IMG/VR virus record: IMGVR_UViG_3300031576_000002
Location: 62,001 to 126,000 of that record
Length of the DNA stretch: 64,000 nucleotides
Direction: 5' to 3' (one strand)
Shown here: piece by piece, positions 29,440 to 50,820 of the stretch
How the letters are laid out: every line of letters starts with the position of its first letter
Numbering within the stretch: position 1 is the stretch's first letter
Position numbers and translations under genes: made by a program
The notes under the pieces: model-generated
The model's database searches: none
What the model was told of the DNA's origin: nothing
Seen by the model: the letters and a program-made list of their open reading frames with translations, nothing else

Positions 29440-29810
29440 GGACGCAGTGTCCCACGGCCAAAGCGCGGTACTTTGACGAGTTGTGGCTGCTCACCTTTCG
29501 GCTTGATGAGCACCGCTTCCTGCCCGTAGCGGCGTCCGTAATCAAGGGCCTGGCTGAGGGGCATGTTCTCAACGCGAATATCGAGTTCCTTCTGCCCCCG
29601 CCAGTTACCCGGCTCTACCCGAAGCCGGGGAAAGCGCTCCTTCAATTCGTCGAGAAGCTGCCAGTGCCGTTCTAGGTTCTTTGCTTCTGGCGCACCAGGG
29701 TTGAAGGCGGAGACGACCGCGTACTCCCAATGTTGAGCGTTCCGGCCCAGCCCGTAGTCGAGAACTTCGCGGACTGGATTCAGGAAGCGCCTGCGCTTAG
29801 GCGAGCCCAT
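29436..29810 (-). CDS. DUF3293-like protein
   Basis: VSAFNPG..N..L..EL..G.W...E..ALDYGRRYGQEAV. Confidence 0.6.
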   Translation of the reverse strand: MGSPKRRRFLNPVREVLDYGLGRNAQHWEYAVVSAFNPGAPEAKNLERHWQLLDELKERFPRLRVEPGNWRGQKELDIRVENMPLSQALDYGRRYGQEAVLIKPKGEQPQLVKVPRFGRGTLRP

Positions 29811-30090
29811 GGGAAAGGTCGATCAGGCGGTCCATGAAGACCTCGGCGAACTGCTCGGCCGCGAACTCGGGATCCTCTTCAGCACCTACCTGGTCGCGGT
29901 AGCGCGCTTCAAAAAGGCGGTCCGCGTACAGCTTGAGGTCGCCCGAGTTGACTGCGACCTGTGCGTTCTGGCGGTCTTCCAACCACGTCTTCTCGGCTGC
30001 CTCTTCCGCAAGCTCTCGAAGGTCGAGAGCGCTGGACGCCAGCTTAGAGATGGCGCCATGAAGAGCGGATCGGGCAAATTTTTGTCTCAC
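29797..30090 (-). CDS. Hypothetical protein
   Basis: Coupled ORF, acidic C-terminus. Confidence 0.5.
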   Translation of the reverse strand: MRQKFARSALHGAISKLASSALDLRELAEEAAEKTWLEDRQNAQVAVNSGDLKLYADRLFEARYRDQVGAEEDPEFAAEQFAEVFMDRLIDLSHGLA

Positions 30091-30093
30091 CGC

Positions 30094-30279
30094 CTACCCC
30101 TCTCGCTTTCCGTGAACGGCGCGGTAGCTGACGCTTTGCATCATCGGGCTCCGCGGATCCAGTCCTACCGGATCCAGCTTCCACAGCGGCACTACAGAGG
30201 CAGTCGTCTGCTTGCCGACTCTTGCAGCGCGTTGCTTGCGGGCACGCTTGGTATTCTTGCGGACTTGCTTAGATGTCAT
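30094..30279 (-). CDS. Small basic protein
   Basis: SD GAGGA; fills the gene gap. Confidence 0.45.
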   Translation of the reverse strand: MTSKQVRKNTKRARKQRAARVGKQTTASVVPLWKLDPVGLDPRSPMMQSVSYRAVHGKREG

Positions 30280-30288
30280 GGAGTCCTC

Positions 30289-30420
30289 TCAGGTGTATGG
30301 ATTTTTCCAGAGTACCGTTACGATGCCCGCCAAGAGTAGCACGATCCAGGCGCGTACGATACCGGCTACGAGCAAGGCGACGAAATTGATTCCTGCCAAA
30401 GTTCGAGCCGCAAAGTCCAC
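30289..30420 (-). CDS. 43-aa membrane peptide (not in the ORF track)
   Basis: AAGGAGG-N5-GTG; MDFAARTLAGINFVALLVAGIVRAWIVLLLAGIVTVLWKNPYT. Confidence 0.55.
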   Translation of the reverse strand: MDFAARTLAGINFVALLVAGIVRAWIVLLLAGIVTVLWKNPYT

Positions 30421-30471
30421 GGTGCCCTCCTTGCCGGAAGCATCTTAGCCGCTTGCAAGGAAGGAGCTACA

Positions 30472-30900
30472 TCATCTTTTGCGCCGGTAGCCGTGGCGGG
30501 CGGCGTGAGCGTCCAGCACTCGCCCGACTTCTGCACGGGCCTTGTCGTTCCAGGAGCCCCAAGGCATCTCGTCTTCCAGCACTTCGCGGCTGGCCTCGAT
30601 GCCGCAGTCGTAGGAAGAGGACAACGACTTGGTCGCTTCCAGGCAGCTCTCGAAGTGCATGACCATGGCCGCAATCCCACGCTGCATTCTCTTGGCCGCC
30701 GCTTCGACCCCGGGCTCGTCTACCCGAAGCCCCCACGCTGCGGGCGTCACGGGAATGTTGTAACGCTGAATATATTTTCCAAGTCGCTTCCGCTCTTCCG
30801 CCTTCTTGGCAATACGCGGCATCAAATCAACAACCTGGGCGGGCTCGGTAGGAGGGCTCTTGATAAAGCCTAGCTCTTTGCGCAATCGCGGAGTTCTCAT
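30472..30900 (-). CDS. Hypothetical protein
   Basis: Start MRTPRL with ATGA overlap. Confidence 0.5.
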   Translation of the reverse strand: MRTPRLRKELGFIKSPPTEPAQVVDLMPRIAKKAEERKRLGKYIQRYNIPVTPAAWGLRVDEPGVEAAAKRMQRGIAAMVMHFESCLEATKSLSSSYDCGIEASREVLEDEMPWGSWNDKARAEVGRVLDAHAARHGYRRKR

Positions 30901-31375: not shown

Positions 31376-31376
31376 G

Positions 31377-31985
31377 TTAGATTCTCAGGAAGTAACGGAA
31401 CTCTTCGCACATTCGCGGACTGCCAAACTCATAACCTTCGTAGTAAAAGTGTTCTCCATAGCAGTGGTAGGGCCATACAATCTTTAGGCGGTCCGAGTGG
31501 TACTCCACGGCGGCTTTGAGTTTTACCCCGTGCTCTAACTTCAGCCAATCTGCAAACTCGTATATGACCTCGTGAAAGACTTGAGTGTTTACAGGGAGTT
31601 CGTACTCCTGCGTGAACTTTTTGCCATCAAACACCATCAGCTTGCAAATACTGATGTCGCCGGCAACGGTCCGGCAGAGAGCGTCCAACCTGCGGCGCAA
31701 AAGGGCAAAGCTCGAAGCTGGCTCTGCGTAGGGCTCTTCTTTAGAAGGTCGCGACGTAGGGCGCTCTGGTCGCGGAAGCGTTCGGAATCCTGACTTTGCC
31801 AGGATTCGATACGCTTCGTTGATCGCCTTCATCCGTTCCTCGGCCATGTCCCGGAACTGCTTGGGCGCACGGTCAGGGTGATAGGCGAGACTCAGAAAGC
31901 GATAGACCTTCTTGATGTCCGCTTTGTCCGCGGACATGGAAACACCTAGCACCTGACAAGCTTCTTGGGGCGTGGAAAGCGGCAT
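31377..31985 (-). CDS. J-domain (DnaJ-like) protein
   Basis: VLGVS..IKKVYR..YHPDR..AEERMKAINEAYRIL. Confidence 0.9.
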   Translation of the reverse strand: MPLSTPQEACQVLGVSMSADKADIKKVYRFLSLAYHPDRAPKQFRDMAEERMKAINEAYRILAKSGFRTLPRPERPTSRPSKEEPYAEPASSFALLRRRLDALCRTVAGDISICKLMVFDGKKFTQEYELPVNTQVFHEVIYEFADWLKLEHGVKLKAAVEYHSDRLKIVWPYHCYGEHFYYEGYEFGSPRMCEEFRYFLRI

Positions 31986-31986
31986 A

Positions 31987-32568
31987 CTACCGCCGTGACA
32001 ATGGATACGCGATATGCACGGCCCTAGAAGCGGCCAGAACCGCCTCTTTCCACCTATCGTACTCGCGCAGCCCTTCCCGCCAAGCGGCTGGACTCAAATC
32101 TCTCGGATCGAGCGAAGTAAACGCTTCGTCGATGCGTTCGGCGTCATTCGAGAAGAAGACGGAGCGCCACCCTTCAGGCGGCCCTTGTCCCCGGCCAAAG
32201 CCTGAGAATCCGGACTCCTTGGCGTACTGCTGGAAAGACACAATCTGATCGTCCATCACGTTGAAGCTGGAGTCTGAGTGCTCGATCTCATGCCGAAGGC
32301 GTTTGACTAGATCATCTCGGGTGCTGAGGTCAAGATCATTGCGCTCCGCCTGGAACTTCTTGAGCACGGCTAGGAGTCCCTGCTCTTCCCAGGTATTCCA
32401 GAACTCACCAATTCCCGGACGCTGAAAGCCAGGATCCTCGGACATGATGTCCTGGACTTTTTCGAGCGTGTCTTGAACGGTCTTGCGCTGCTTCTGGATA
32501 CGGCGTTCGCCGAGGTCGATGACATCGGCCTGAGAGAAGCGTTGAAGTACAGCCTGGAGGCGTTTCAT
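31987..32568 (-). CDS. Hypothetical protein with amphipathic leader
   Basis: ATGA-coupled start MKRLQAVLQRFSQA. Confidence 0.55.
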   Translation of the reverse strand: MKRLQAVLQRFSQADVIDLGERRIQKQRKTVQDTLEKVQDIMSEDPGFQRPGIGEFWNTWEEQGLLAVLKKFQAERNDLDLSTRDDLVKRLRHEIEHSDSSFNVMDDQIVSFQQYAKESGFSGFGRGQGPPEGWRSVFFSNDAERIDEAFTSLDPRDLSPAAWREGLREYDRWKEAVLAASRAVHIAYPLSRR

Positions 32569-32798
32569 TTTGATCTCGGCCCGAACTGAGTCTTGACCCA
32601 TTCCAGAGAGCTTGCTCTACCGTCTCCGAACTGATTCCAGAAAGCGTGAAAGGTTCCCTCGGGGTAAGGAAAGAGGGCTTGGTAGAGGTAGAGCTTGTCC
32701 CTGATGTTGTCTTTGTCGTGGATCCGTTGAATCTTGGACTCGTAGGGCTCCTGGACAGGAGCAGAGAAGCGGTGGAGGATGGAGGTGAGGGGGCTCAT
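32565..32798 (-). CDS. Hypothetical protein with MSPLT leader
   Basis: MSPLTSILHRFSA. Confidence 0.5.
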   Translation of the reverse strand: MSPLTSILHRFSAPVQEPYESKIQRIHDKDNIRDKLYLYQALFPYPEGTFHAFWNQFGDGRASSLEWVKTQFGPRSK

Positions 32799-32803
32799 TG
32801 TGC

Positions 32804-33160
32804 TCACGCGAATGTAAGATACTCCGGTGAAGCAAAGATGTTTCGCCGTTTCAAGGGCTCCGGAGATTCTGCTTCGCACCAGCGTTTCGTCCACGGCAGT
32901 GAATCAATGTCGGGGAACAGATAGAAAGGGGCTCTCATACCTCCGACCGCAGAGGTCCATGCAGGGGGCTTCTGCCCCTTCCGAAGGGCGAGTAGCTCGA
33001 TGATGGCGGCAGCTAGGGCTAGTTCTTCTGAACTTCCCAGGCAGGGTCTTTCTACCTCCCCGAGGTTATCGACAGAGCGCAGAAGCTCCATCGTCCACGC
33101 ACGCACGTAAAAATCGTTCTGTGCGTGCGCAGCAACTGCAATCTTTTCAAGTAGGCTCAT
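32804..33160 (-). CDS. Probable antitoxin-like partner of the nucleotidyltransferase
   Basis: ALAAAIIELLA..PPAW..PFY..ESPEPLKRRNIF, a pattern I associate with DUF6036 neighbours. Confidence 0.55.
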   Translation of the reverse strand: MSLLEKIAVAAHAQNDFYVRAWTMELLRSVDNLGEVERPCLGSSEELALAAAIIELLALRKGQKPPAWTSAVGGMRAPFYLFPDIDSLPWTKRWCEAESPEPLKRRNIFASPEYLTFA

Positions 33161-33734
33161 GAAGCCTTCCCCACAAATCGTCAAAGGCATACTGCATTTT
33201 AAGCTCTCGGCCTTTTTGAAGAAAGGGCTGCAAACTTTCCCAGACACTCTCTTTGCTCGCATCTTCTGCCAAAGCCTTGAGCAGTTCCGTAGCGTCTCCG
33301 TAGTCACCCGCTCCACGCCAAGCCCCCAGCTTCAGAGCTAGCAACTGTTCTGTAGAGGGCTGAGAAGCTGTGATCCCTTCTGATTGTACCAGAACAGGAC
33401 CCTCGGATAGAACATCGACATAGCCCTTGGCCGCATCATTGAGCCAGTCACGGGGCCAGTTGTTCTCTGCGGCTACCGCCTCTGCCCATTTCCGCACGAG
33501 CTGTGCATTGGGCGATAGAATGACGACGTCAACATCTTTGGTGGACTCTCGGGTGCGGTAGCCAAGAACCATAGCAGCGCCACCAAGAACGACCAAATGG
33601 ATCTGTTGACCATCGGCATGGGCAAGTTCGCCGAGTCGGGTAAGGCCGGATTGAATATCGGAAAAGTTGAAGGAGGAGTCTGCGGGAGACGCGGAAAGGC
33701 AGAGGCGACGGAGGATAGCTGTGAGGGGGCTCAT
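33147..33734 (-). CDS. DUF6036/AbiEii-like nucleotidyltransferase
   Basis: LVVLGGAAM..RESTKDVD..WLND..LLALKLGA.R..DYGD. Confidence 0.8.
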   Translation of the reverse strand: MSPLTAILRRLCLSASPADSSFNFSDIQSGLTRLGELAHADGQQIHLVVLGGAAMVLGYRTRESTKDVDVVILSPNAQLVRKWAEAVAAENNWPRDWLNDAAKGYVDVLSEGPVLVQSEGITASQPSTEQLLALKLGAWRGAGDYGDATELLKALAEDASKESVWESLQPFLQKGRELKMQYAFDDLWGRLHEPT

Positions 33735-34936
33735 GCTGCGGCCTGGACGAGACGGGGTATGCCGAGGAAGGTGCGGAGGCGCTTGCGGACTAGCTTGCGG
33801 CCTTCCTTGGACTTCAGTTCGCACTCCCACACAATGAGCAATTTCCATCCTGCATCAGCTAGAGCTTCTGCCTTTGCTTTATCACGTAGTACGGCGGCGA
33901 TCTGCGGAACGTACTTAGGAGTGTACGGCTGATGCCATTCATTACCAACAGCGTGTGCATGCCAAAAGCATCCATTGCACTCTATCGCTACTTTAGTTTG
34001 TAAGAGCGCGATGTCGAGGGCTCGCTTCTTACCACGCTGGTAGCGATGGTCAAAAGTGTAATCAGTTTGAAACTCTACCCCCAGTTTGCGCAAAATTCTC
34101 TGGACACGGCGTTCAGGTAGCGAATCCTTGACTGGCTGGCAACGGCGTAACGGAATACCGAACTTCTTCACTCGGTCGGCTATGGTACTCGTGGTGCAAT
34201 GAAAGCATCGAGCAATTTCCGGAATTGTCAGCTTTTGAGCTGTATAGAGCCCTTCTAGCGACTCTTTTGTAATATCGGGCCTTCGCTCACGATCCGGCCA
34301 GTTACCAGCTTCGATTGTTCTTTTAGCCCAAATCTTCGTCGCCGTTACTGTATCGCGCCTTTTTACCCCACTTCTTTCCAGGCGGTCAATAATAGTAGTT
34401 GTATCAACTTTAAGTTCTGCTGCAAGACTCGAAGCGCTCCTGCCGTCCTTGTATTGAACGACTATGTACGCATCATCAAGCTCTTTAGCCGCAAAACTCT
34501 TCCTAACGCTTACCCCTTGTGCAGACATGTAACTGCGTACGGTAAGACCGTCAAGCCCGGTACGGTTAGCTATCTCTCTGATACTATGCCCTGCCTTGTA
34601 GAGAGACACTATTTCAGAAGACTTTTCTGCGTACTTCCTCCATTCGTACTTGTAGACTCCCGCAAGAGTCAAACGATTTATTACGATTTTCTCTGTTGTT
34701 TCTACTTCGCGTGCAATCGCTCGCGGACCTTTTCCCGTCTGGTAGAGCTGTAAGATACGTTCAGCATCGACCTCAACTCTTCCAGGGCACTTTTCGATGA
34801 TAACCCCCGCTTCGCGCAGTCTGGACTTGACGAGCTTTCTGGAAACTCCTAAAGAAGCCGCCAAAGCGCTTAGGCTTTCCCGCGCCTTGTAGCGTGCAAC
34901 TAGCACGGCCGAGTTGAGATGGATTTGGCGTTTCAT
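33731..34936 (-). CDS. Free-standing Vsr/DUF559-type endonuclease with multiple HTH repeats
   Basis: Five LY..G.S..IA repeats; LDIA..VAIECNGCFWHAH..RD..GWKLLIVWECE; TATAAAAT upstream. Confidence 0.85.
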   Translation of the reverse strand: MKRQIHLNSAVLVARYKARESLSALAASLGVSRKLVKSRLREAGVIIEKCPGRVEVDAERILQLYQTGKGPRAIAREVETTEKIVINRLTLAGVYKYEWRKYAEKSSEIVSLYKAGHSIREIANRTGLDGLTVRSYMSAQGVSVRKSFAAKELDDAYIVVQYKDGRSASSLAAELKVDTTTIIDRLERSGVKRRDTVTATKIWAKRTIEAGNWPDRERRPDITKESLEGLYTAQKLTIPEIARCFHCTTSTIADRVKKFGIPLRRCQPVKDSLPERRVQRILRKLGVEFQTDYTFDHRYQRGKKRALDIALLQTKVAIECNGCFWHAHAVGNEWHQPYTPKYVPQIAAVLRDKAKAEALADAGWKLLIVWECELKSKEGRKLVRKRLRTFLGIPRLVQAAA

Positions 34937-34970
34937 GCAGCGGGCAATTTTATAGCAACTGCGTAGAACA

Positions 34971-36812
34971 TCAAGGCGTAAATCCGCTTCCTGCAAGTAC
35001 CCCGCTAGGCCCGCCGACCGACAAGCCGTACCTACTGAAAAACCCCGACGGAACACTACTATTACAGCACATGATCCCGTCCGCTACAAAGTTCTCGAAC
35101 CTGCTCCCAGGCACAGAAATATCGTACATACGTGGGCTCTTCATAGGCTCGATAGATACGATCTTAGCGCGACAGACTTCGGTATCCAAGAGATGCCCTT
35201 GCGCCCTTGGAGGAGCTACGACAATCTCATCTCCCACTTGAAGGTCTCGACCTTTTACCCGTAGAAGGCTGTTCAAGCCGAACCGAAATACCGAGTGGTC
35301 TCCCGTGAGAGAAATCGATGTCCTGCTTGACAGACGCACCCGATAGCAGTCCTTTCCCGCGCAATCATGAGAGAGCCACGCCTGGACTTTTTTCCAGGCA
35401 GGACGCCCCGTCTTTGTATCGACCGCAAGCACTTCGGGAGATTTGACTTCAGCGGCAAAATCGCCAATTGGAACTGTCTGGATCTTTCCGCCGTCCCTCA
35501 CAATCAACTCGTGTTCCGCGCCAACAGAAAAGAAGCGGCCAATCGAGTTGTGAGCCATGACGCCCGAAGCCACGAAGTTCTCTACTCCAGGCACGGACAG
35601 GTCGTACATCTTAGCTACGTGAACAGGTTCTACTGCCTTGACACGGTCAATCCGTGAAGTGCTGGTTTCCAGACGGTGCCGAAGATCGCAAGTGACAATC
35701 TCACTACCTTCTTTCAGGGCTCTTCCTTGTACCGGCTCCAGCCGGTTTCCCTGCACCTCAAACAAGGAGTGATCCCCTGTAATCGTAATGGACTTTCCAC
35801 CGGCTGTCTTGATCTTGTAGCAGTCTTTGGCAGAAGTGTCGTGCTCCCACCACTGGGTAACCGGATGCCATCCTACCTCACCGCTAGCGGGATGGATCGC
35901 CAAGACTTCAGAGCCTTCTCGTGGGTTCGCACAAGCCTCTCCAATCGTAACCGGATAGGTTCGTTTACCCTCCCGTATAAGTAATTCTTCTTCAGTAGAT
36001 ATACTGAAGGAATACTGCATCTGGACTAACACCGATCCTTGACTTCTAAACTGCTGCTTGAACCGGATCAGCCAGTCTTTGAAGTCCGCGAACAGGGGAA
36101 GTCCGCTCACCTGAGCAATCTTGCTCAGGTGGTCAATGGTGAGCGCGTTGCCGCCGAGGCTGTAGACGTAGTCCGTGTCCACGGCGTAGATGCCCTGGCT
36201 CTCCAGGGCTACCAGGGTAGCGGCCTGGATGAGAACCCAGAGATGCTGGTCTGGGAAGTTGCCGACCCCGAACCCGGTATAGGGCGGCACCATGTTGATG
36301 ACGCCCGCTCCGAGGTCGAGGTAGACGGACATCATCGCGTCGGAGTAGCCGTAGGTGACGCCTCCCCGCGACGTAATGTTGGTGGACGTGAGGCTCTTGC
36401 GGCTCTTGTCCACCATCAGCCGCAGGATGGGGATGTACTTGAAGTATTTGATCGGGGCTACGCGGATCAGGTGCTGCTTCCGGATCTCCCTGGCGTTTCC
36501 AGTCCGGAAGCGGTAGAAGGCCAGGTACGTGGGGCTCTGAAGCAATGCTGAGTCAAAACCGTACTTGTACGTGCCCAATCCAAGCCGCTGGACAGCACCA
36601 CTGCCTGCCTCTGGAAACAGCAGCGTCTCGATCGCGGTCCCGCCGTCGTCCACTAGCTCGATCTTTCCCGCTTCGGGGTCGGTCGTGATGAGCTGCTCGG
36701 GAGTCGCGTTCCTGTCGAGTGGCTCGGTCGCCGCAATGAGAATGTCCTCGGCAGTGCCTTGCCTGAGCAGGACAAGCTCTTGATCGCTTCTGAGAGGCTG
36801 TGGCTGGCTCAT
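34971..36812 (-). CDS. Putative head-tail/neck protein interrupted by two mini-inteins
   Basis: Two Hint domains; predicted spliced product of about 304 aa; host-protein function inferred from context only. Confidence 0.6.
   Translation of the reverse strand: MSQPQPLRSDQELVLLRQGTAEDILIAATEPLDRNATPEQLITTDPEAGKIELVDDGGTAIETLLFPEAGSGAVQRLGLGTYKYGFDSALLQSPTYLAFYRFRTGNAREIRKQHLIRVAPIKYFKYIPILRLMVDKSRKSLTSTNITSRGGVTYGYSDAMMSVYLDLGAGVINMVPPYTGFGVGNFPDQHLWVLIQAATLVALESQGIYAVDTDYVYSLGGNALTIDHLSKIAQVSGLPLFADFKDWLIRFKQQFRSQGSVLVQMQYSFSISTEEELLIREGKRTYPVTIGEACANPREGSEVLAIHPASGEVGWHPVTQWWEHDTSAKDCYKIKTAGGKSITITGDHSLFEVQGNRLEPVQGRALKEGSEIVTCDLRHRLETSTSRIDRVKAVEPVHVAKMYDLSVPGVENFVASGVMAHNSIGRFFSVGAEHELIVRDGGKIQTVPIGDFAAEVKSPEVLAVDTKTGRPAWKKVQAWLSHDCAGKDCYRVRLSSRTSISLTGDHSVFRFGLNSLLRVKGRDLQVGDEIVVAPPRAQGHLLDTEVCRAKIVSIEPMKSPRMYDISVPGSRFENFVADGIMCCNSSVPSGFFSRYGLSVGGPSGVLAGSGFTP
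35061..35528 (-). mobile_element. Mini-intein 2 (156 aa, ends CCN)
   Basis: SVGAEHEL..LTGDHSVF..MYDISV..ENFVADGIMCCN|S. Confidence 0.85.
35547..36005 (-). mobile_element. Mini-intein 1 (153 aa)
   Basis: SISTEEEL..ITGDHSLF..MYDLSVPGVENFVASGVMAHN|S. Confidence 0.9.
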
Positions 36813-37834: not shown

Positions 37835-39615
37835 GAAATGAGCTTTTCGTCGCGCTCGCGTACATTATCCTTCACCCACTGAATGTTGGACCTAGACCGT
37901 TCATCCTGATTCTCTGGACGACTTTGCAAGTGCTTGATTCTTGTATCCTTGTCCGCCTGCCGGAAGATCCTGAGCACGCCTTGGAGCGGCAGATCTATCT
38001 GCCTTGGATCGCGCTCTGGCGCAAACAGTGGAAAGCTGGAATAAACAGGAACTTCATAGCCTTCCGCTTTCATCCATTCGATGAAGTTCTTGATCGTCTC
38101 TTCATTCAATTCTGCCGAAATCTTCTCCAGTATCTTCTCTCGGCCTTCTACAAGGCGGTCGATAAACTCACCCTCAGCTTTCATCTCTAGCTCGGAACGA
38201 TACTCGCTTTGGTACCAATCATCTACGTCCAACTCATCCAAAACGGTATAAGCCTCTTCCTGCTCTTCAGGATCATCCGTAGTAATTTCGATAATGCCGC
38301 CCTTGGCAGTGAGATGGGGAACCGAGTCTTCGAGCCACTCTATAAAGGTTCTCTCTACATCGATCTCTTTTATCAGATCGGCCAGGTCAAGACTGTAAGG
38401 ATCTTCGGATAGTTTTTTCCACTCTGCTTCATAATCTTTAAAGTCGATGTAGTCGATAAAGAGTCCGATAGCCAAAGGCGGTATGTTCTCCTCCATCCAG
38501 TGTCCTAGCATCCTGCGTGGGTACTCCTCGTCTACTAAGATTTCCTGCTCTGGCCTGAGCTTTCTATGCTCCTCTTCCCACTTCAGATCCTGCTCGATCC
38601 ACTCCTGCGTCCGCTCTATCGCGGACTCTTTGAGATCATCTATTTCATAGTGGTCGGCGTACTCATGGCGTAAGTTCACACCAAGACTATTGGTCAACTT
38701 TTCGAGCGTGTACGCGCCAATGCCTATGAGAGGTCTTCGGATCTCGTCGATAACTTTTTCGCCTACTTCCCGATCACGAACGTCTTTGTACTGACGAGAT
38801 TCTGGATGTGCCAGCACGTACTTCTCGCCGTTTTTCAGGATGAGGTAGAGCGGACCGTCTTTCAGGTAGTCCTTTGAGAACCGTGGATCCTTCACGCACC
38901 AGTCTGTGCCGTGACAGAGTGCCGCAGAAGACTCAGGCGTCGTAATCTTCAGTACCTGGTACGTGCCGTCGTCATAGACTTGCTGCGCACCTTCTACTTC
39001 CTTGACGCGGACCTTCTCCTTCTTGCTTTCCTGGCCAGTTGCGCTGTCGATCGCATCCGCAAGATCGCCGTAGCTTCTGTACTGGCCGATGTCTTTGGGA
39101 GCCTGGAAGCGTGGACTGTTCTTGAGCCGTTCAAACTTGGAGAGCGCTTCGTGGACTTTCTCGGTATCTTCTGGAAACCGGATCTGCTCCGCCTGCACCT
39201 GACGGACGATCCAGGACAGATACTTCTTGGCAAGCGATGGATCGGCTTCCGCCGCTTCTCGGATCTCGGCTTCACCGAACTGCGGAAATGCTTTGAGCAG
39301 GCCGGGTAGCCTCTCTTCAAGCCCTGCTTGAATGAGACGGGCTAGGACTCTTTTCAGCGCGGCCGGAGCCCAGGCACCTCCCTGCTCCTGACTTCTCGTA
39401 CCTCGTTGAAAGTTTCCGCGCGTATCTATGAAGCCAGTGTCCTGAATGTCGTCCCATGCTAGCGAATTGCTCAACACGATCTCGACGTGAGGCTGGTCAA
39501 ACTCTCCCACGATGACCTCGCCGTCGGTAAGGAGAATCGCCGGGCGGCGCTTTACGAACTCTGCGTGCAGCAATTCATTGGCTAGCAGCAGGGTAGTCGC
39601 AGTCAAGGGGCTCAC
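37753..39615 (-). CDS. Multidomain protein with repeated leader motifs
   Basis: GTGA-coupled start MSPLT; ADPS..KYLSW, KDIGQY, GTDWCV domain; acidic C-terminal half. Confidence 0.6.
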   Translation of the reverse strand: MSPLTATTLLLANELLHAEFVKRRPAILLTDGEVIVGEFDQPHVEIVLSNSLAWDDIQDTGFIDTRGNFQRGTRSQEQGGAWAPAALKRVLARLIQAGLEERLPGLLKAFPQFGEAEIREAAEADPSLAKKYLSWIVRQVQAEQIRFPEDTEKVHEALSKFERLKNSPRFQAPKDIGQYRSYGDLADAIDSATGQESKKEKVRVKEVEGAQQVYDDGTYQVLKITTPESSAALCHGTDWCVKDPRFSKDYLKDGPLYLILKNGEKYVLAHPESRQYKDVRDREVGEKVIDEIRRPLIGIGAYTLEKLTNSLGVNLRHEYADHYEIDDLKESAIERTQEWIEQDLKWEEEHRKLRPEQEILVDEEYPRRMLGHWMEENIPPLAIGLFIDYIDFKDYEAEWKKLSEDPYSLDLADLIKEIDVERTFIEWLEDSVPHLTAKGGIIEITTDDPEEQEEAYTVLDELDVDDWYQSEYRSELEMKAEGEFIDRLVEGREKILEKISAELNEETIKNFIEWMKAEGYEVPVYSSFPLFAPERDPRQIDLPLQGVLRIFRQADKDTRIKHLQSRPENQDERSRSNIQWVKDNVRERDEKLISWVFGNYNGKGCGPRSTTTSRSEIFLL

Positions 39616-40094: not shown

Positions 40095-40412
40095 CTAGTC
40101 CCGCCGAGGATGGGGGCGCTGCCCTAGCTGGAGCTTTCTTCCAATCTGGCGAGCTACTTCCTCCCAGGAAAAGCCTGCGGAGTCTCCAGTCTCGACAATA
40201 CTGCGAACTCGTGAATCTTGTCCGAACCTGCGCTCTAGCTCCTGCCCAAGGTTAACCCAATCAGGTTCCGGGTCTCCCCACTCACCAATCGCTTTTGTTA
40301 CAAGATCCCCGACCGGCCAGAAATCCTGATTGTACTGAAATAGTTTCACGACTGCATCGACCGTACTGTTGCTGTCCGCCAAGAGGTGTAGTGCGTTTCT
40401 TAGGTGTTTCAT
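40095..40412 (-). CDS. Hypothetical protein with amphipathic leader
   Basis: MKHLRNALHLLA. Confidence 0.5.
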   Translation of the reverse strand: MKHLRNALHLLADSNSTVDAVVKLFQYNQDFWPVGDLVTKAIGEWGDPEPDWVNLGQELERRFGQDSRVRSIVETGDSAGFSWEEVARQIGRKLQLGQRPHPRRD

Positions 40413-40422: not shown

Positions 40423-40908
40423 CTACTCCGGCAAGATACCGATTCCACGTCGAACGGTTTGCACCACCGACTTCTCAGGATCTACGTCAAACGCCTTGAA
40501 CAGAATATCTGTGGCTTTCTCGACATCGAACTCCTTACAGGAAAAGAAATCGGCTGATAGATAAGAACGCTGCGGCCAGGTATGAACGGAGAGATGAGAT
40601 TCCGCGATTATGACAATTCCGGAAACTCCCGACTCCCCCCACGCACGTTCTTCGAGATGCCGTTCCATATCTCGAACTACAGTTTCTGCGTGAGACGGTA
40701 ACGGAGCAACTCCACCACGGAGCTGCTCTACAAAACGCTGAAGCTCGCTCGCTGCATGCGGGAAACGTACGCAAAGCGGTGGCACTACGACACACATATC
40801 TAGGTGCGCCGGCATCTCTGCAAGTACGTGATAAACGGTCTCTAAACTCGCTAGAGCCCCGGGGCTCCTAACCCGGCAATCAAAAAGTAGGTGCAACCCA
40901 GTCTGCAT
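40423..40908 (-). CDS. speD: S-adenosylmethionine decarboxylase proenzyme
   Basis: [31 protein letters not shown]; GGAGG SD before the ATG at 40908. Confidence 0.9.
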
Positions 40909-42311: not shown

Positions 42312-42680
42312 TTACGGAGCAGTAGAAGCGTCCGTGATTCTCAGCCGCAGCAAGTCGAGCAGCTTCAGCCCGTCCTCGTGCGGAAGCGCTTCGTAGACCT
42401 CGATCGCTAGAACTGGCCCCGCCTCGAACAAGGCGTTGACAACATCTTCGAGGTTTCCGTTAATCCAGGTCTCGGCCAACTCTTGTGCCTCGTTGAGACC
42501 CTCCTCACCACCTAGCCCTTTCGTAGAATCTTCCATGGACTCTTCCATGGACTCTTCCATGGACTCTTCCGTGGACTCTTCCATGGACTCTTCCATGGAC
42601 TCTTCCGTGGACTCTTCCATGGACTCTTCCACGTCGTCTTCCGCGCCGATAGCGCGGATGATTCTACTGAGGCGCTGCAT
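42312..42680 (-). CDS. Acidic protein with (M/T)EES repeats and amphipathic leader
   Basis: MQRLSRIIRAIGA; GGAG SD. Confidence 0.6.
   Translation of the reverse strand: MQRLSRIIRAIGAEDDVEESMEESTEESMEESMEESTEESMEESMEESMEDSTKGLGGEEGLNEAQELAETWINGNLEDVVNALFEAGPVLAIEVYEALPHEDGLKLLDLLRLRITDASTAP
42526..42633. repeat. 12-bp tandem repeat, about 9 copies (GGACTCTTCCAT)
   Basis: Directly visible in the sequence. Confidence 0.9.
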
Positions 42681-45753: not shown

Positions 45754-46023
45754 TCAGTTCTTCCTCACATGTAGGGTGTAGCCCTGTCCGATATCGAAGG
45801 ATACCAGTTCGTCGTTCTCACTAAGTAGGTGTGTTTCCCCCACCCGCTCTACACTTGATAGGTGCTGTTGTACAAAGACATTGGCCGCTTCCAATGGATC
45901 GTTTGCCTCAACCACAACCTGCGGATATGCAGAATCGTACCCCCGTTCAGAATCCCAGCGGTTCAACTGAACTTGATACGAGCGTGCAGTAAGGATACGA
46001 ATGGCACGGATTAGCGCGTACAT
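45754..46023 (-). CDS. Hypothetical protein with amphipathic leader
   Basis: MYALIRAIRILTA. Confidence 0.5.
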   Translation of the reverse strand: MYALIRAIRILTARSYQVQLNRWDSERGYDSAYPQVVVEANDPLEAANVFVQQHLSSVERVGETHLLSENDELVSFDIGQGYTLHVRKN

Positions 46024-47009: not shown

Positions 47010-47834
47010 TTAGTTCACCTTCACGACCGTAAGGGTTCGTTGGTGCGTTGTGCCGGTACCACCCGATACTCTCCACCGGATCTCAATTGCTTGACCCCCC
47101 GTTACACCCGTTACGTAGGCGTGGGTTGCGACTGGATACGGATTGTTGGCCTGTCCTTTGGACGGTCGCTCCGTATGGGCCACCTGGACGCCCCCCACGT
47201 AAATCGAAATCGTGGTGCTCTGGGCACCCGAAGTATTCTCCAGCGTAGTGGTGAACCAGATAAGGTAGCCGCCCGCCCCCGGCGTAAGGGTCATGCCAGA
47301 CAAGAGCCCGTCAGTGGGGGATATTGTGGTGGTGTCGCCCGTGGCCGAAACTTGCGCCGGGGTCCCGATGGTGCCGGCAAGACCGCTAACCGATTTGATC
47401 TTGGCCTGGTTGCTAGCATCAATCTCCAGCGTCACGTTATCGGTCTTGACCGCGAGGAACCCGGCATCTGCTGCCGCAGCTCCAGTACCATCCGAGTTCC
47501 TATCCTTGACGATCCCACCGTACTGTTGCGCGAGTGCCGCGACCGCGACATCCGACGAGATAGTGCCGCCAGACTTCCCAATCCCGTCGCCCGCCGACAG
47601 GTACGTGAGGCCATCAACGTAACTTTTGGAGGTTGCGGCAGGAGCACTGGACGGGGTGGTCGGCACCACGACATCGCCTGATCCGTCCCGCTGCACGATG
47701 TTGCCCGCGGTTGCGGCGGTGCCGAACGCCTTCTCCGCCAAGGCACTCGACTCTGTACCCAGCAACGTCCCGTTGGTACCGGGCGCGTGGTTCTCCGCGT
47801 TACTGATCGCGTGCTGTTTCTTGTGGATCGCCAT
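47010..47834 (-). CDS. Fibre/whisker-like protein
   Basis: AATSKSYVD, AGDGI, BclA-C-like C-terminal domain. Confidence 0.55.
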   Translation of the reverse strand: MAIHKKQHAISNAENHAPGTNGTLLGTESSALAEKAFGTAATAGNIVQRDGSGDVVVPTTPSSAPAATSKSYVDGLTYLSAGDGIGKSGGTISSDVAVAALAQQYGGIVKDRNSDGTGAAAADAGFLAVKTDNVTLEIDASNQAKIKSVSGLAGTIGTPAQVSATGDTTTISPTDGLLSGMTLTPGAGGYLIWFTTTLENTSGAQSTTISIYVGGVQVAHTERPSKGQANNPYPVATHAYVTGVTGGQAIEIRWRVSGGTGTTHQRTLTVVKVN

Positions 47835-47836
47835 TT

Positions 47837-49045
47837 TCAGCTATCCATCTCGACCAACGCGAAGTCGTCGATTGTGCCGGCCGCAACACTGCGGCGGAAC
47901 GCCAAGTACGTGGAATCGGTCGCGCCCTTCTTGAAGAAAGCCCATTGGTTCACAGCCGTCAGTTGGTCCAGCTCTCCCGTGAAGACGGGATCTGCCCCTG
48001 CGTAGCTGAAGGCCCCCTGGAACAGCACAGCGTTCGACCCCGCCTTGAGCCGAAGCTGATTTGAAGGATCGACCTCCAGGGTTGTGTTGTCGGTCTTGAC
48101 CGCAAGAAATCCTGCATCGGCCGCTGCCACGCCTGTACCGGCAGAATTCCGATCCTTGACAACGCCACCGTACTGCTGCGCAAGAATGGCGGTCGCGACG
48201 TCAGCAGCCAGGGGAGTACCAGAGCCTCCCCCGAGTCCATCGCCGGCTGCTCCTGCGGCAATCCGGACCTGATTGGACCCGTCAATCTCTAGTGTTAAAA
48301 AATCGGTCTTGGCCGCAGCGTACCCCAGGTCTGCTCCCGCGATCCCAGATCCATCGGCAGTGCGACGAACATCAAGACCGCCGTACTGTTGTGGCGCCGC
48401 CGCTACCGCAGGGGCTACCCGTAGGACGTTGACGGCTTTGTCGAGACCGTCACCTGCTTCAAGCTGCGCCGCAGTAAAAGGACTCCACGGCAAAGGATCG
48501 GTATCAACAATATCGGTGCCGAAGGGTGCAGTACATACCCACGAGGTATTGATATTGACTGTACCTTCCAACACCGAGATGATAAACACGCCGCTGGCCG
48601 AATTCCCCGTCACCAAATCGGAGGAACGGACAGGAGCGCCCGCGAGCTGGACGTCGTATACCCCATTCTGGGTCGCGGACACTTGGTTCTTGATTAGGAT
48701 GCGGTCCCCCGTCACGAGCAATACGCCGTCAATCGTGTCGCCATTCTCAAAATCGGTCGCGAGGGTACCGGCCACCACGGTGGCGGCCCGGGCAGCTTCG
48801 TGGGGTTGCAGCCCTGAAGCCGCGGCATCAACGTACGCCTTGGACGCCGCATCATTCGATTCGAAGGGAACCAGCGGAACATTGATCTGATCGCCGTCTC
48901 GTTGAACCAGAGCATCCGACGTCACCATAGGGCTAAACACAATCTCGGCGAGCAATCCTCCACTATCCGTCCCGATAACCGTCTCGGCGGTCCCGGGGTC
49001 GTGGTCTCCGGTGGAGGCCAGCTCGTGGTTTTGCCGGTGGCTCAT
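47837..49045 (-). CDS. Fibre/head-decoration-like protein
   Basis: AASKAYVD..TIDGVLLVTGDRILIKNQ..NGVY domain; AGDGL repeats; ATGA-coupled start. Confidence 0.65.
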   Translation of the reverse strand: MSHRQNHELASTGDHDPGTAETVIGTDSGGLLAEIVFSPMVTSDALVQRDGDQINVPLVPFESNDAASKAYVDAAASGLQPHEAARAATVVAGTLATDFENGDTIDGVLLVTGDRILIKNQVSATQNGVYDVQLAGAPVRSSDLVTGNSASGVFIISVLEGTVNINTSWVCTAPFGTDIVDTDPLPWSPFTAAQLEAGDGLDKAVNVLRVAPAVAAAPQQYGGLDVRRTADGSGIAGADLGYAAAKTDFLTLEIDGSNQVRIAAGAAGDGLGGGSGTPLAADVATAILAQQYGGVVKDRNSAGTGVAAADAGFLAVKTDNTTLEVDPSNQLRLKAGSNAVLFQGAFSYAGADPVFTGELDQLTAVNQWAFFKKGATDSTYLAFRRSVAAGTIDDFALVEMDS

Positions 49046-49713
49046 GGGGGCGTCGTCAGTTCCACGGCATACAGCGTACCGCTCACGTTCAAGACCTGGA
49101 ACGAGGTCAAGTTGACGGTGTCGAACCAAAAGCCCCATGTACTCGTGGGGATCTGGACTGTCGCGGGGGCCGCGGGCTGAGAGAAAATCCCGCGGTACGC
49201 ATGGGCCACGCTGGCGGCAACGTGTGCATCGAGCGTTGCGCCATCGACCGAAACATCGCGCCCGTCGAAAGTTCCGGGAGTCGTGAAGTTTCCGAGATCG
49301 TCAAGAATCGCGAGACTGTTCTGGATGATTTTTCCAGTAATTCCGTCAAACCGAGTAACGGCGTTGTCGGTCGAAACCGCAGGGCCGTCAACATCGCCCA
49401 GTGCCCCCGCATTGATATTTGAAAATGCTTCTTCGGCATCACTCGGATTCCCGATATTGGGGTAGCTGCCTTCTACGATTACGTTCGAGGCTGTAATCTG
49501 CCCAGAAGAGATAAGAGTTAGGGCTTCAATCACATCCCGGATTTCAACGCCCCGTGCTCGCGGCTCCTTAGCAATTCCCTCTTCCCGTAAAAGCTTGTCA
49601 AGAAGATAAGGATTAGGAGCACCCGGTTGCTCACGACCTCGAACAAATACGCCCGTGCCGTAACCACCGACAATTCGCCGAAAGAAATCTGATACGACAG
49701 AAATAGCTGCCAT
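49042..49713 (-). CDS. Fibre-like virion protein
   Basis: GDVDGP..STDNAV.RFDG.TGKIIQNS and DGRDVSVDG motifs. Confidence 0.6.
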   Translation of the reverse strand: MAAISVVSDFFRRIVGGYGTGVFVRGREQPGAPNPYLLDKLLREEGIAKEPRARGVEIRDVIEALTLISSGQITASNVIVEGSYPNIGNPSDAEEAFSNINAGALGDVDGPAVSTDNAVTRFDGITGKIIQNSLAILDDLGNFTTPGTFDGRDVSVDGATLDAHVAASVAHAYRGIFSQPAAPATVQIPTSTWGFWFDTVNLTSFQVLNVSGTLYAVELTTPP

Positions 49714-49723
49714 GGTAGTTGGC

Positions 49724-50230
49724 TTAGTTCACGCCAGTCCGTGAAGACGTACCATTCGGTTTCAGACCCAGCAACGCTTCAACTTTGCCCTTGTCTCGTA
49801 GAACTTGTTCAAGAGCCCGCTTGAGCACTAAAACTTCTTGAAGGTGTGAGTCAATCTTTTGCTGACGCTCTTGAATATCACTCACAGCATGCTCGATCCT
49901 ATCAATTCCTTCTTTTGTTGCACGAGCAATGGCGAGAGAGTCTCCTTCTTTGAAGACGCCGGCTAGAGCTTCGAGCCTCCCCATTCGCCCTGCTAGTTGA
50001 TCTATGTCTTGCTGTAGCAACGCCAAGTGTTGAGCCGCGTCAACCACTTTCGGGGACTCTAGCGACACAAGCGCATTTCGCCGTTTCGGTGGCGCGCTTT
50101 GGGGCTTAGGAGCATCTTCGGTGGGTACGACCTCTAAGCCTTTAGAAACTGGTCCCACCTGCTCATTGCCGCGCACGAATACTCCTGTCCCGCGCCTGCG
50201 GACAAGCAAACGACCGGCGTAAACGGGCAT
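49724..50230 (-). CDS. Coiled-coil protein with GTGVFVRG motif
   Basis: Translated ORF. Confidence 0.5.
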   Translation of the reverse strand: MPVYAGRLLVRRRGTGVFVRGNEQVGPVSKGLEVVPTEDAPKPQSAPPKRRNALVSLESPKVVDAAQHLALLQQDIDQLAGRMGRLEALAGVFKEGDSLAIARATKEGIDRIEHAVSDIQERQQKIDSHLQEVLVLKRALEQVLRDKGKVEALLGLKPNGTSSRTGVN

Positions 50231-50288
50231 GTTACAAGTCTAGCCGGGCACCGTCGCCCGGTAGCAGCGCGTGTTGTCAGACCGACAG

Positions 50289-50588
50289 CTAGCCGCCAAA
50301 GACCGACTTCTTGATCGCGCCAATGATTCCGTCGAACCGAGCAAACTGCGAATTGGGGTAGGTCATCCGAAGATGGCTGAGAACGTCGAATCCCGCTTTC
50401 GGATTTTCAGGATTGGGGTTCCTGAAAAAAACCTCGAAGGCTCGGCCGTCTTTCCGCGCAGATGCCATCTCCATACCGGAGATAATGAGAAACGCGGCAA
50501 GGCCCAGGTCGCCAACCTTGTAGAAACCTTCCGGCGTAGGGCCAAAGTTCATAGGCCGGAACTCGTGGATAGTCGCAGTCGCGGGCAT
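50289..50588 (-). CDS. DUF5659-like protein
   Basis: DLGLAAFL..G..FEVFF. Confidence 0.45.
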   Translation of the reverse strand: MPATATIHEFRPMNFGPTPEGFYKVGDLGLAAFLIISGMEMASARKDGRAFEVFFRNPNPENPKAGFDVLSHLRMTYPNSQFARFDGIIGAIKKSVFGG

Positions 50589-50589
50589 G

Positions 50590-50820
50590 TCAGCCTACTT
50601 TCAAAATGCGAATCGCACGCTGGAGAGAACTCTGCCGCGGACGCAGAACTCCTTCTGCTACATCTGCCGCTTCATCGGTTCCGGTAGCGCCCGTGTTCAA
50701 CTCGTGCGCCGTGTTGGAGGCTACTTGGTAGCTCTCGTCCTGTATGACGCGCTTGCCGGTCTGGGTGTCCACTACATCCCAGTTTCCGTCTGCCGTGGGC
50801 TTGGTTTGGTATCGCATCAT
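50590..50820 (-). CDS. Hypothetical protein
   Basis: Coupled ORF; C-terminal LQRAIRILK. Confidence 0.5.
   Translation of the reverse strand: MMRYQTKPTADGNWDVVDTQTGKRVIQDESYQVASNTAHELNTGATGTDEAADVAEGVLRPRQSSLQRAIRILKVG

What the first reader, a model, noticed from the sequence alone, without database searches (positions are those of the whole stretch)
29797..50820. Shared amphipathic leader ending in Ala on unrelated proteins: candidate capsid-targeting/cargo-loading signal
Seen: after correcting starts (several by ATGA/GTGA coupling), unrelated ORFs begin with a similar basic amphipathic helix ending in Ala: MSPLTAILRRLCLSA (33734), MSPLTSILHRFSA (32798), MSPLTATTLLLA (39615), MKRLQAVLQRFSQA (32568), MKHLRNALHLLA (40412), MQRLSRIIRAIGA (42680), MYALIRAIRILTA (46023), and more loosely ..LHGAISKLA (30090). 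It also occurs internally (ALKRVLARLIQA, LQGVLRIFRQA) and at a C-terminus (LQRAIRILK, 50590). Two of the MSPLT leaders are also near-identical in DNA. Known: T4 internal proteins carry an N-terminal capsid-targeting sequence removed by the prohead protease. Inference: this is a portable tag that recruits foreign enzymes into the head for injection, with cleavage after Ala (compare DRTA in the capsid protein and RKA/RRLA in the scaffold).
Basis: partly seen in the sequence, partly recalled or inferred. Interest (0 to 1): 0.78.

Follow-up and report, generated by a model that had tools for sequence, protein, structure and literature searches.

The report
Shared terminal address tag on phage accessory proteins
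An uncultivated 205-kb phage puts the same 13-residue basic amphipathic peptide at the start of at least 15 otherwise unrelated accessory proteins encoded among its head and tail genes; the peptide most likely loads them into the capsid for co-injection, as the phage T4 capsid-targeting sequence does, but this is not proven.

Summary
After iteration, 15 proteins genome-wide carry M-x-x-L-x-x-[AIV]-[IL]-x-x-L-[AGST]-[AG] exactly at residue 1. About ten more are looser or offset, and two carry it at the extreme C-terminus.

Conservation is at the peptide level, because the conserved residues use many synonymous codons. The carriers are mutually unrelated; they include a NUDIX hydrolase, two kinds of nucleotidyltransferase and an acidic repeat protein. 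The nearest stand-alone NUDIX homologs begin exactly where the leader ends.

Carrier genes sit in gap-free operons inside the terminase-portal and head-tail modules. They are absent from syntenic loci of related phages (0/15 against 35/69 for untagged genes).

A T4-like capsid-targeting, cargo-loading tag is the best explanation (about 0.5). It rests on context only. Cleavage after Ala has only weak indirect support, and a complex prediction gave no answer. Rivals are a membrane or other docking helix.

Novelty: new variant of a known kind.

The parts
33696..33734 (-). 13-codon leader (MSPLTAILRRLCL) of a 195-aa DUF6036-type nucleotidyltransferase (gene 33147-33734). Its ATG overlaps the upstream stop (ATGA).
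   Evidence: score 16.2; DNA repeat family D3
32760..32798 (-). Leader (MSPLTSILHRFSA) of a 77-aa ORFan (gene 32565-32798). It shares 28 of 34 bases with the 33734 leader.
   Evidence: score 15.8
32530..32568 (-). Leader (MKRLQAVLQRFSQ) of a 193-aa ORFan (gene 31987-32568), with ATGA overlap to the upstream stop.
   Evidence: score 15.0
39577..39615 (-). Leader (GTG start, SPLTATTLLLAN) of a 620-aa protein (gene 37753-39615). Its residues 104-299 resemble a PA5oct virion structural protein.
   Evidence: (score 12.5)
39328..39366 (-). Internal leader-like copy (ALKRVLARLIQAG) in the 620-aa protein. It lies directly before the domain that is 52% identical to the N-terminal domain of the 584-aa protein encoded next to the terminase.
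   Evidence: (score 5.8)
37957..37995 (-). Second internal leader-like copy (LQGVLRIFRQA) in the 620-aa protein.
   Evidence: (score 8.3)
40374..40412 (-). Leader (MKHLRNALHLLAD) of a 105-aa ORFan (gene 40095-40412), with a Shine-Dalgarno site upstream.
   Evidence: score 16.2
42642..42680 (-). Leader (MQRLSRIIRAIGA) of a 122-aa hyper-acidic protein with 12-nt tandem (MEES/TEES) repeats (gene 42312-42680).
   Evidence: D1; score 12.3
45985..46023 (-). Leader (MYALIRAIRILTA) of an 89-aa ORFan (gene 45754-46023).
   Evidence: score 13.5
29797..30090 (-). 97-aa ORF with a loose leader copy (SALHGAISKLAS) offset 6-7 residues from its GTG start.
   Evidence: below the internal top scores, so only a loose member
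59957..59995 (-). Loose leader (MDMLRSVIASLND) of a 96-aa ORFan upstream of the head genes.
   Evidence: score 3.5 with the seed-only matrix
50593..50631 (-). C-terminal copy of the motif (SSLQRAIRILKVG, one residue from the end) in a 76-aa protein (gene 50590-50820). The gene is inserted between two head-module genes that are adjacent in relative L010.
   Evidence: core score 9.0
53116..54297 (-). Major capsid protein (393 aa). It has a conserved [RK]-T-A-S at residues 94-98 within a variable stretch, which is a candidate maturation site.
   Evidence: (phrog_2522, E 2e-47)
55115..56749 (-). 544-aa highly charged, low-complexity protein encoded between the protease and capsid genes. It is a candidate scaffolding protein and therefore a candidate receptor for the leader.
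   Evidence: homologs in 25 relatives' loci; the scaffold role is inferred from position and composition
56755..57624 (-). Head maturation protease (289 aa). Its N-terminus (MFALTAEARVL...) resembles the leader. Ala6 is invariant in 15 homologs, within a K-T-A motif.
   Evidence: (phrog_18299, E 8e-36)

Best explanation
The 13-residue basic amphipathic helix, followed by a short flexible linker, is a portable address tag. It is usually at residue 1 and occasionally at the extreme C-terminus. The tag docks accessory proteins onto a component of the assembling prohead, either the scaffold core or the inner face of the capsid shell. The proteins are thereby enclosed in the head and delivered to the next host with the DNA. 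This is the logic of the T4 capsid-targeting sequence, the P1 DarB signal and the encapsulin or microcompartment cargo peptides. The prohead protease may then remove the tag near the small residue at positions 12-13.

Shown:
- The tag exists, is start-anchored, and is selected at the peptide level.
- It is a discrete add-on to unrelated domains.
- It marks lineage-specific accessory genes inside the morphogenesis operons.

Inferred: binding to the prohead, packaging, injection and cleavage.
For: 1. Start-anchored enrichment holds on held-out genes and against the opposite strand.
2. Conserved Leu4, Leu11 and Ala12 use 4-6 different codons each, so the constraint is on the peptide.
3. The hydrophobic moment peaks at 100 degrees (0.47 against 0.29 for other N-termini, P = 7e-5), and net charge is +1.5. 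Residues 14-25 are enriched in linker-type residues.
4. Carriers are mutually unrelated apart from one paralog pair. They include a NUDIX hydrolase, DUF6036 and NTP_transf_2 nucleotidyltransferases, and an acidic repeat protein.
5. Stand-alone NUDIX homologs at 54-56% identity begin exactly after the leader. AlphaFold2 gives pLDDT below 50 only for residues 1-13.
6. Carrier genes lie in a gap-free operon from the terminase towards the portal, in the head-tail interval, and beside a 1142-aa protein whose homolog follows the head genes in a relative.
7. Carriers are accessory: 0 of 15 have homologs in relatives' loci, against 35 of 69 untagged neighbours (Fisher P = 1e-4). T4 internal proteins are likewise a diverse set sharing only the targeting sequence (PMC3012670, PMC9026906).
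8. There are indirect virion links. The PA5oct homolog of the 620-aa carrier is structural by mass spectrometry. The nearest NUDIX homolog lies in a polyvalent-type protein, and NUDIX domains are fused to portal proteins in other phages (PMC5512222).
9. Two of the best non-N-terminal matches sit at the very C-terminus (P about 0.01). That fits a docking helix better than an N-terminus-specific signal.
10. The phage has a prohead protease and a scaffold-like protein.
Against: - There is no direct evidence that any carrier is in a virion. The phage is known only as a metagenome contig.
- The complex prediction of leader with capsid protein, protease and scaffold C-terminus gave no answer.
- Related phages at 40-64% capsid identity show no enrichment of the motif near their head or terminase genes. 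A conserved receptor would therefore have had to acquire a new ligand in this lineage alone.
- Most mature carriers are acidic, unlike the basic T4 internal proteins.
- The residues before the leader's Ala (mostly L-L-A or L-x-A) do not match the [RK]-T-A context seen in the capsid protein and protease.
- For the 310-aa nucleotidyltransferase, structural matches to phage homologs begin at residues 1-7, so its first helix might belong to the fold.
Confidence: 0.5

Rival explanations
1. The leader is a membrane-targeting amphipathic helix, of the kind at the ends of MinD or FtsA. It holds the accessory enzymes at the inner membrane of the infected cell.
For: The leader is basic, amphipathic and 2-3 turns long. 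It often ends in Gly or Ala and works at either terminus. The comparison with MinD and FtsA rests on my own knowledge and was not tested here.
Against: The hydrophobic face is small (Leu, Ala, Ile/Leu, Leu, Ala) with few bulky aromatic residues. Carriers are confined to the morphogenesis modules and absent from the two roughly 56-kb blocks of replication/tail genes and of small genes. There is no obvious reason for NUDIX hydrolases and nucleotidyltransferases to act at the membrane.
Confidence: 0.15
2. The leader docks the carriers onto some other hub. Candidates are a phage or host chaperone (a DnaJ-domain protein is encoded next to three carriers), the phage tubulin, or a phage-built compartment. 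It could also act as a recognition tag for timed proteolysis.
For: A J-domain protein at 31377-31985 lies beside the carriers at 32568, 32798 and 33734. A tubulin-family gene follows the portal and a carrier gene. A Leu-rich core flanked by basic residues resembles what Hsp70 binds; this point rests on my own knowledge.
Against: No specific evidence points to any of these hubs. Strict anchoring at residue 1 and the location in head operons are not explained. No microcompartment shell gene is present.
Confidence: 0.2
3. The leader has no targeting function. It is a remnant of how the genes were acquired, for example capture of cassettes by recombination at a shared 5' coding segment, or a favourable translation-initiation region for genes without a ribosome-binding site.
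For: Two leaders share 28 of 34 bases, and a third is detectable as a DNA repeat. Homing-endonuclease genes and an intein lie in the same islands. Several carriers lack a Shine-Dalgarno site and start in ATGA overlaps.
Against: Across the 15 core members, mean nucleotide identity is only 39%. Identical residues use the same codon in only 27% of pairs, so what is kept is the peptide pattern and not the RNA or DNA. A neutral remnant would not keep helical periodicity. C-terminal copies cannot be initiation regions.
Confidence: 0.1
4. The similarity is chance, or comes from cherry-picked start codons.
Against: The held-out test gives 6 hits against 0.34 expected, and 0 of 2000 shuffles reach that. 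An independent gene caller that did not know the motif placed 12 regex hits at its called starts. The opposite-strand control gives 1 hit in 656 ORFs.
Confidence: 0.02

Closest known systems
Phage T4 capsid-targeting sequence (CTS) of internal proteins IPI-III, Alt and others (Mullaney & Black 1996; reviewed in PMC9026906, PMC3012670)
   Same: Both are short N-terminal peptides (10-19 residues in T4, 13 here) that are the only thing shared by otherwise diverse proteins. The carriers are non-conserved accessory proteins that vary between relatives. Both phages have a scaffold core and a prohead protease.
   Different: - This phage is not known to be related to T4, and the tag was found by its own pattern, not by similarity to the T4 sequence.
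- There are many more carriers here (15-25).
- Carriers here are mostly acidic enzymes and ORFans, not small basic proteins.
- The T4 tag ends at a Glu cleavage site; here the end is a small residue, and cleavage is unproven.
- Packaging has been demonstrated in T4 and not here.
- Relatives of this phage do not share the tag.
Phage P1 DarB N-terminal capsid-targeting signal (PMC9024508)
   Same: An N-terminal segment (the first 30 residues suffice) directs an anti-restriction protein, and a reporter, into the capsid.
   Different: In P1 no consensus is shared among the Dar proteins. Here the consensus is the defining feature.
Encapsulin cargo-loading peptides and bacterial microcompartment encapsulation peptides
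   Same: Both are short terminal amphipathic helices joined by a flexible linker to unrelated enzymes, usable at either terminus, and they bind the inside of a protein shell. Encapsulin shells have the same fold class as phage capsid proteins. This comparison rests on my own knowledge.
   Different: The phage has no microcompartment shell gene. The shell here would be a DNA-filled virus capsid. No binding was tested successfully.
Polyvalent proteins and MuF/portal-effector fusions of phages (PMC5512222)
   Same: The same kinds of effector domain (NUDIX, nucleotidyltransferase, acetyltransferase-like) are predicted to be delivered with the DNA. The nearest NUDIX homolog lies in such a protein.
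   Different: There the effector is covalently fused to a head protein or forms part of a giant polypeptide. Here each effector is a separate small protein carrying a 13-residue tag.
Giant-phage head propeptides (phiKZ, SPN3US; PMC5694885)
   Same: Head and ejection proteins carry N-terminal propeptides that a prohead protease removes.
   Different: Those propeptides are mostly longer than 100 residues, are cut after Glu at A-X-E or S-X-E, and are not a shared short consensus.

Membership tests
T4-type capsid-targeting sequence system | A short N-terminal peptide is the only similarity among otherwise unrelated proteins | tested here: met
   There are 15 start-anchored members, and they show no mutual similarity beyond the leader except one paralog pair.
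T4-type capsid-targeting sequence system | Carriers are variable accessory proteins encoded with the head genes, in a phage that has a scaffold and a prohead protease | tested here: met
   (0/15 against 35/69 conserved). Protease: phrog_18299. Scaffold-like protein of 544 aa.
T4-type capsid-targeting sequence system | Carriers are physically inside the virion or prohead | not testable with these tools
   Only indirect evidence: the PA5oct homolog of one carrier is structural by mass spectrometry, and there is a polyvalent-protein homolog.
T4-type capsid-targeting sequence system | The peptide ends at a prohead-protease site and is removed | tested here: inconclusive
   Positions 12-13 hold small residues. 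[RK]-T-A-S is conserved in the capsid protein, and the Ala of K-T-A is invariant in the protease. However, the preceding residues differ, and no cleavage data exist.
T4-type capsid-targeting sequence system | The peptide alone suffices to package a foreign protein | not testable with these tools
   This needs a reporter assay. The complex prediction gave no answer.
Microcompartment encapsulation peptide / encapsulin cargo peptide | Terminal amphipathic helix plus linker on unrelated enzymes | tested here: met
Microcompartment encapsulation peptide / encapsulin cargo peptide | A microcompartment shell protein (PF00936) is encoded alongside | tested here: not met
   One search found no match in the 205-kb genome. 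The host genome is unknown.
Sec/Tat/lipoprotein signal peptide | An uninterrupted hydrophobic core of about 7-15 residues, a twin-arginine motif or a lipobox | tested here: not met
   Read directly from the aligned leaders. The hydrophobic residues are spaced i, i+3, i+4, i+7 with charged residues between them, and there is no lipobox Cys.
Membrane-targeting amphipathic helix (MinD/FtsA type) | A basic amphipathic terminal helix that binds the membrane | tested here: inconclusive
   The helix properties are met. Membrane binding cannot be tested here.
Polyvalent / MuF-portal fused effectors | The effector domain is covalently joined to a head protein or lies within a giant multidomain protein | tested here: not met
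   Carriers are stand-alone proteins of 58-620 aa. Only their homologs elsewhere are fused.

The most novel reading that the evidence does not exclude
The tag may not be a capsid signal. It could be a linear address label for another phage-organised structure in the infected cell. This phage encodes a tubulin next to its portal gene, so one option is a tubulin-organised assembly or replication zone, or a chaperone hub. That would be the first simple peptide zip-code for intracellular sorting of phage proteins. A nearer variant is that the tag is an independently evolved capsid-loading code serving more than 20 different cargo proteins at either terminus, which would be the largest such set known.
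Probability: 0.08. Interest if true: 0.9.

Novelty: new variant of a known kind. Interest (0 to 1): 0.66.

Why it matters
If the tag loads cargo into the head, up to about 9% of this phage's genes would encode proteins injected with the DNA. These include nucleotide-modifying enzymes of the kind used against host defences. That would show that modular cargo loading by a short peptide is not peculiar to T4-like phages and has arisen separately in an environmental phage lineage.

It would also give a sequence rule for predicting injected proteins from a genome alone. And it would supply a compact 13-residue tag that could be tried for packaging proteins into HK97-type capsids.

If the tag addresses something else, it would still be a rare case of a readable sorting signal in a phage proteome.

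Tried and rejected
- **Near-DNA search of the region against phages:** no match.
- **Capsid protein against viral contigs:** no relatives found.
- **Word-indexed homolog search with the 310-aa carrier:** found only itself.
- **tblastn of all 24 carriers against about 890 kb of relatives' loci:** no hit.
- **Matrix and regex scans of those loci:** no enrichment. One plausible single case (L028:12818) and otherwise noise equal to the opposite strand.
- **Degenerate DNA pattern of the MSPLT leader in viral contigs:** one chance hit in a 31-codon ORF.
- **Complex prediction (capsid protein + protease + scaffold C-terminus + leader):** 'no answer', so it is not evidence either way.
- **PDB sequence searches of protease and scaffold:** nothing useful.
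- **DNA- or RNA-level element:** rejected because of synonymous codon diversity.
- **Paralogy as the cause:** rejected.
- **Chance or start-codon picking:** rejected.
- **Secretion signal:** rejected by inspection.
- **Clustering statistic:** the mean nearest-neighbour distance is not significant for the strict set because of one outlier, but is significant for the looser set (P = 1e-4). I rely instead on the synteny comparison.


Full report
**Setting**

The window is bases 62001-126000 of a single 205,227-bp contig. The contig is the JGI metagenome record Ga0247727_10000083. It is classed as a linear virus record with an estimated completeness of 85%. My own gene caller finds about 278 genes, 277 of them on the minus strand, with GGAGG-type ribosome-binding sites. 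No phage in the GenBank collection is close at the DNA level.

The head genes lie at 50.8-57.6 kb of the window:
- The capsid protein is at 53116-54297 (phrog_2522, E 2e-47).
- A 544-aa highly charged scaffold-like protein is at 55115-56749.
- A head maturation protease is at 56755-57624 (phrog_18299, E 8e-36).

The large terminase and a 1078-aa portal protein lie upstream of the window, at genome 34.7-36.7 kb and 21.1-24.3 kb.

The moved starts are reasonable:
- 33734, 32568 and 39615 overlap the upstream stop as ATGA or GTGA.
- The DUF6036 domain of the 33734 protein needs the upstream start.

1. A loose regex with no start-codon requirement hits 12 of the 278 called starts, against 0.58 expected from the rate at internal positions.
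2. It gives six scores above 5. Shuffling residues 2-14 of each N-terminus gives 0.34 on average, and none of 2000 shuffles reaches six.
3. After iteration, 15 proteins carry the motif exactly at residue 1, with scores of 11.7-17.3. The best of about 55,000 internal positions scores 10.1.
4. On the coding strand 11 of 600 long ORFs match; on the opposite strand 1 of 656 does.

Further members begin the genes at window coordinates -28646, -31537, -40892, 74500, 75486, 77721, 78186 and 140031. Looser members are at -30995, -35716, -27338, 59995, 77364, 82403, 83802 and 141164.

**Anatomy of the leader**

The consensus is M-[SKQ]-[RP]-L-[QRT]-[AR]-[AIV]-[IL]-x-[LR]-L-[AGST]-[AG].
- The hydrophobic moment peaks at 100 degrees per residue, the period of an alpha helix. 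It is higher than in other N-termini (0.47 against 0.29, P = 7e-5). Net charge is about +1.5.
- The following twelve residues are enriched in Pro, Ser, Asp, Glu, Gly and similar linker-type residues (0.53 against 0.42, P = 0.006), and no similarity continues past position 13.
- The conserved residues use many synonymous codons. Leu4 uses CTC, CTA, CTT and TTG. Leu11 uses six codons. Ala12 uses three.
- Mean nucleotide identity among members is 39%, and identical residues share a codon in only 27% of pairs.

Selection therefore acts on the peptide, not on the DNA or RNA. The exception is the pair at 33734 and 32798, which share 28 of 34 bases. The leader at 32568 is a weaker third copy. This points to recent spread of the leader by recombination or duplication within one island.

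**The leader is a discrete add-on**

With the first 14 residues removed, the 24 candidate carriers show no mutual similarity, except for one paralog pair (the proteins starting at -35716 and 82403, 32% identity).

The recognisable domains are diverse:
- a NUDIX hydrolase (start 74500; domain from residue 34);
- DUF6036-type nucleotidyltransferases (33734, 82403, -35716);
- a phage-type NTP_transf_2 nucleotidyltransferase (-31537; atlas score 0.97, TM 0.75-0.77);
- a hyper-acidic repeat protein (42680);
- a possible acetyltransferase-like domain (75486; a lead only).

An exhaustive search with the NUDIX carrier found 5047 relatives, and none covers residues 1-8. The two closest stand-alone homologs (54-56% identity) begin with Met plus one residue, and then align from the residue that follows the 13-residue leader.

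An AlphaFold2 model built on that alignment is confident overall (mean pLDDT 87.8), and the only stretch below 50 is residues 1-13. NUDIX genes of other phages match only from about residue 50 onward.

One caveat concerns the 310-aa nucleotidyltransferase. Structural matches to phage homologs start at residues 1-7, so its first helix could belong to the fold.

**Terminal, not only N-terminal**

I scored the core of the motif at every position. Setting aside two probable alternative starts, two of the best non-N-terminal matches end within one residue of the C-terminus. The chance of two of the top six lying there is about 0.01.

Internal copies in the 620-aa protein are weaker (scores 5.8 and 8.3). 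The first is informative, however. It sits directly before a domain that is 52% identical to the N-terminal domain of the 584-aa protein encoded next to the terminase. That protein's reading frame continues upstream to a GTG and encodes its own leader-like segment in the same position. The same domain is the part that resembles PA5oct protein EST35_0205, annotated as a structural protein found by ESI-MS/MS.

**Where the carrier genes are**

They fall into four groups:
- six or seven between the terminase and the portal, plus one between the portal and a tubulin-family gene;
- seven beside a 1142-aa protein;
- two near the contig end.

None lies in the two blocks of about 56 kb that hold the replication and tail genes and the many small genes.

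From the terminase downstream, thirteen genes follow one another with gaps of at most about 10 bases, and they include the carriers. Co-expression with the packaging and head genes is therefore the default expectation.

I compared this with related phages (terminase 47-50% identical, capsid 61-64% identical). The conserved genes keep their order there, while the carriers are missing. In relative L010, the homolog of the 1142-aa protein directly follows the head genes. Across the intervals covered, 0 of 15 carriers have a homolog in the 84 related loci, against 35 of 69 untagged genes (Fisher P = 1e-4). The carriers are thus lineage-specific insertions into the morphogenesis modules. Homing-endonuclease genes and an intein share the same islands.

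**What the relatives say about the tag**

In about 890 kb around the capsid and terminase genes of relatives, the motif is no more frequent than on the non-coding strand. A few suggestive N-termini exist, for example L028:12818, L008:1928 and L014:13315. In the form seen here, the tag family is peculiar to this phage lineage. That weakens any model that needs an ancient conserved receptor, but it does not exclude recent recruitment.

**Cleavage**

The capsid alignment shows a conserved [RK]-[TQS]-A-[SG] in an otherwise variable stretch at residues 94-98. Cutting there would leave a mature protein of about 296 residues.

Protease homologs begin with a conserved x-F-x-K-T-A in which the Ala is invariant, followed by a second K-x-A. 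This fits a protease that cuts after Ala, and the protease's own N-terminus in this phage resembles the leader.

The residues before the leader's small residue are mostly Leu, not Lys, Arg or Thr, and there are no cleavage data. This part of the interpretation stays an inference.

**Mechanism**

The best-supported reading is a cargo-loading tag analogous to the T4 capsid-targeting sequence. In T4, 10-19-residue N-terminal propeptides give otherwise diverse internal proteins affinity for the scaffolding core, and the prohead protease then cuts them off. The first ten residues suffice to package foreign proteins, and the internal proteins vary between related phages (PMC9026906, PMC3012670). P1 DarB has an N-terminal signal with the same effect (PMC9024508).

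The enzyme types carried here are those predicted to be delivered with phage DNA, either as polyvalent proteins or as fusions to head proteins (PMC5512222). The nearest NUDIX homolog (65% identity) lies inside a 1411-aa ART-PolyVal/NUDIX protein. NUDIX domains fused to portal proteins occur in other phages.

I put this explanation at about 0.5. The rivals are:
- a membrane-targeting helix (0.15);
- docking to another hub such as a chaperone, the tubulin or a protease (0.2);
- a functionless remnant of gene capture (0.1);
- chance (0.02).

A complex prediction with the capsid protein, the protease, the scaffold C-terminus and a leader peptide returned no answer, and I do not use it as evidence.

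**Verdict**

The portable tag on foreign enzymes is shown, while capsid targeting and cleavage are plausible but untested. I rate it a new variant of a known kind, with interest about 0.66.

Noticed in passing
genome 19263-20423 (upstream of the window; locus L097): A tubulin-family gene (PF00091, 33.5 bits with its neighbours, over the cut-off) lies just downstream of the portal gene and one carrier gene. A relative has a TubZ-like gene in the same place. The small HK97-type capsid protein argues against a phiKZ-like nucleus-forming phage; this last point is my inference.
   Followed up: partly
window 34971-36812 (-); also L010:2932-5070 and proteins P0124, P0125: A 613-aa protein conserved in 23 relatives carries an intein (PF14890, E 4e-25). 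Relatives carry inteins or LAGLIDADG inserts in their protease and terminase genes.
   Followed up: no
window 33731-35056 (-) and genome 137903-138493: A multi-HTH protein with a Vsr/HNH-type endonuclease domain, and a separate HNH_3 endonuclease, sit inside the islands that hold the carrier genes. They are possible agents of gene turnover there.
   Followed up: no
window 42506-42661: A 12-nt tandem repeat with 9 registers encodes (M/T)EES repeats in the hyper-acidic carrier protein.
   Followed up: no
window 47406-47552, 48056-48202, 48269-48415: Three copies of a 147-nt direct repeat (61-73% identity) span two adjacent genes, one of which matches head-decoration and virion-structural PHROGs. 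These are probably repeated domains.
   Followed up: no
genome about 2750-3920, 146700-147870 and 160088-161260: Three roughly 390-aa genes have near-identical N-termini (MRRSYKFR.QPTKAQEINLQRLLD), and one of them is the only plus-strand gene. They look like copies of a transposon-associated gene (TnpB-like by my recollection); this was not checked against any family library.
   Followed up: no
window 40423-40908 (-) and 31377-31985 (-): An S-adenosylmethionine decarboxylase-like protein (PF02675, E 1e-19) and a DnaJ-domain protein (PF00226, E 4e-14) lie among the carrier genes.
   Followed up: no
loci L073, L082, L077, L086, L068: In several relatives the protease reading frame runs on for 871-1369 codons. 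This suggests protease-scaffold fusions or intein inserts.
   Followed up: no
genome 136488-137486 versus 140195-143623: The 332-aa carrier (start 75486) is a paralog of the C-terminal domain (residues 842-1094) of the neighbouring 1142-aa protein (E 1e-11). That large protein itself has three weak internal leader-like matches.
   Followed up: partly
window 87502 (outside the window proper; genome about 149502): A GTG 17 codons inside the called 419-aa gene would give an N-terminus VMILARALSLLGQG that fits the leader. This is a possible additional member, or a mis-called start.
   Followed up: no
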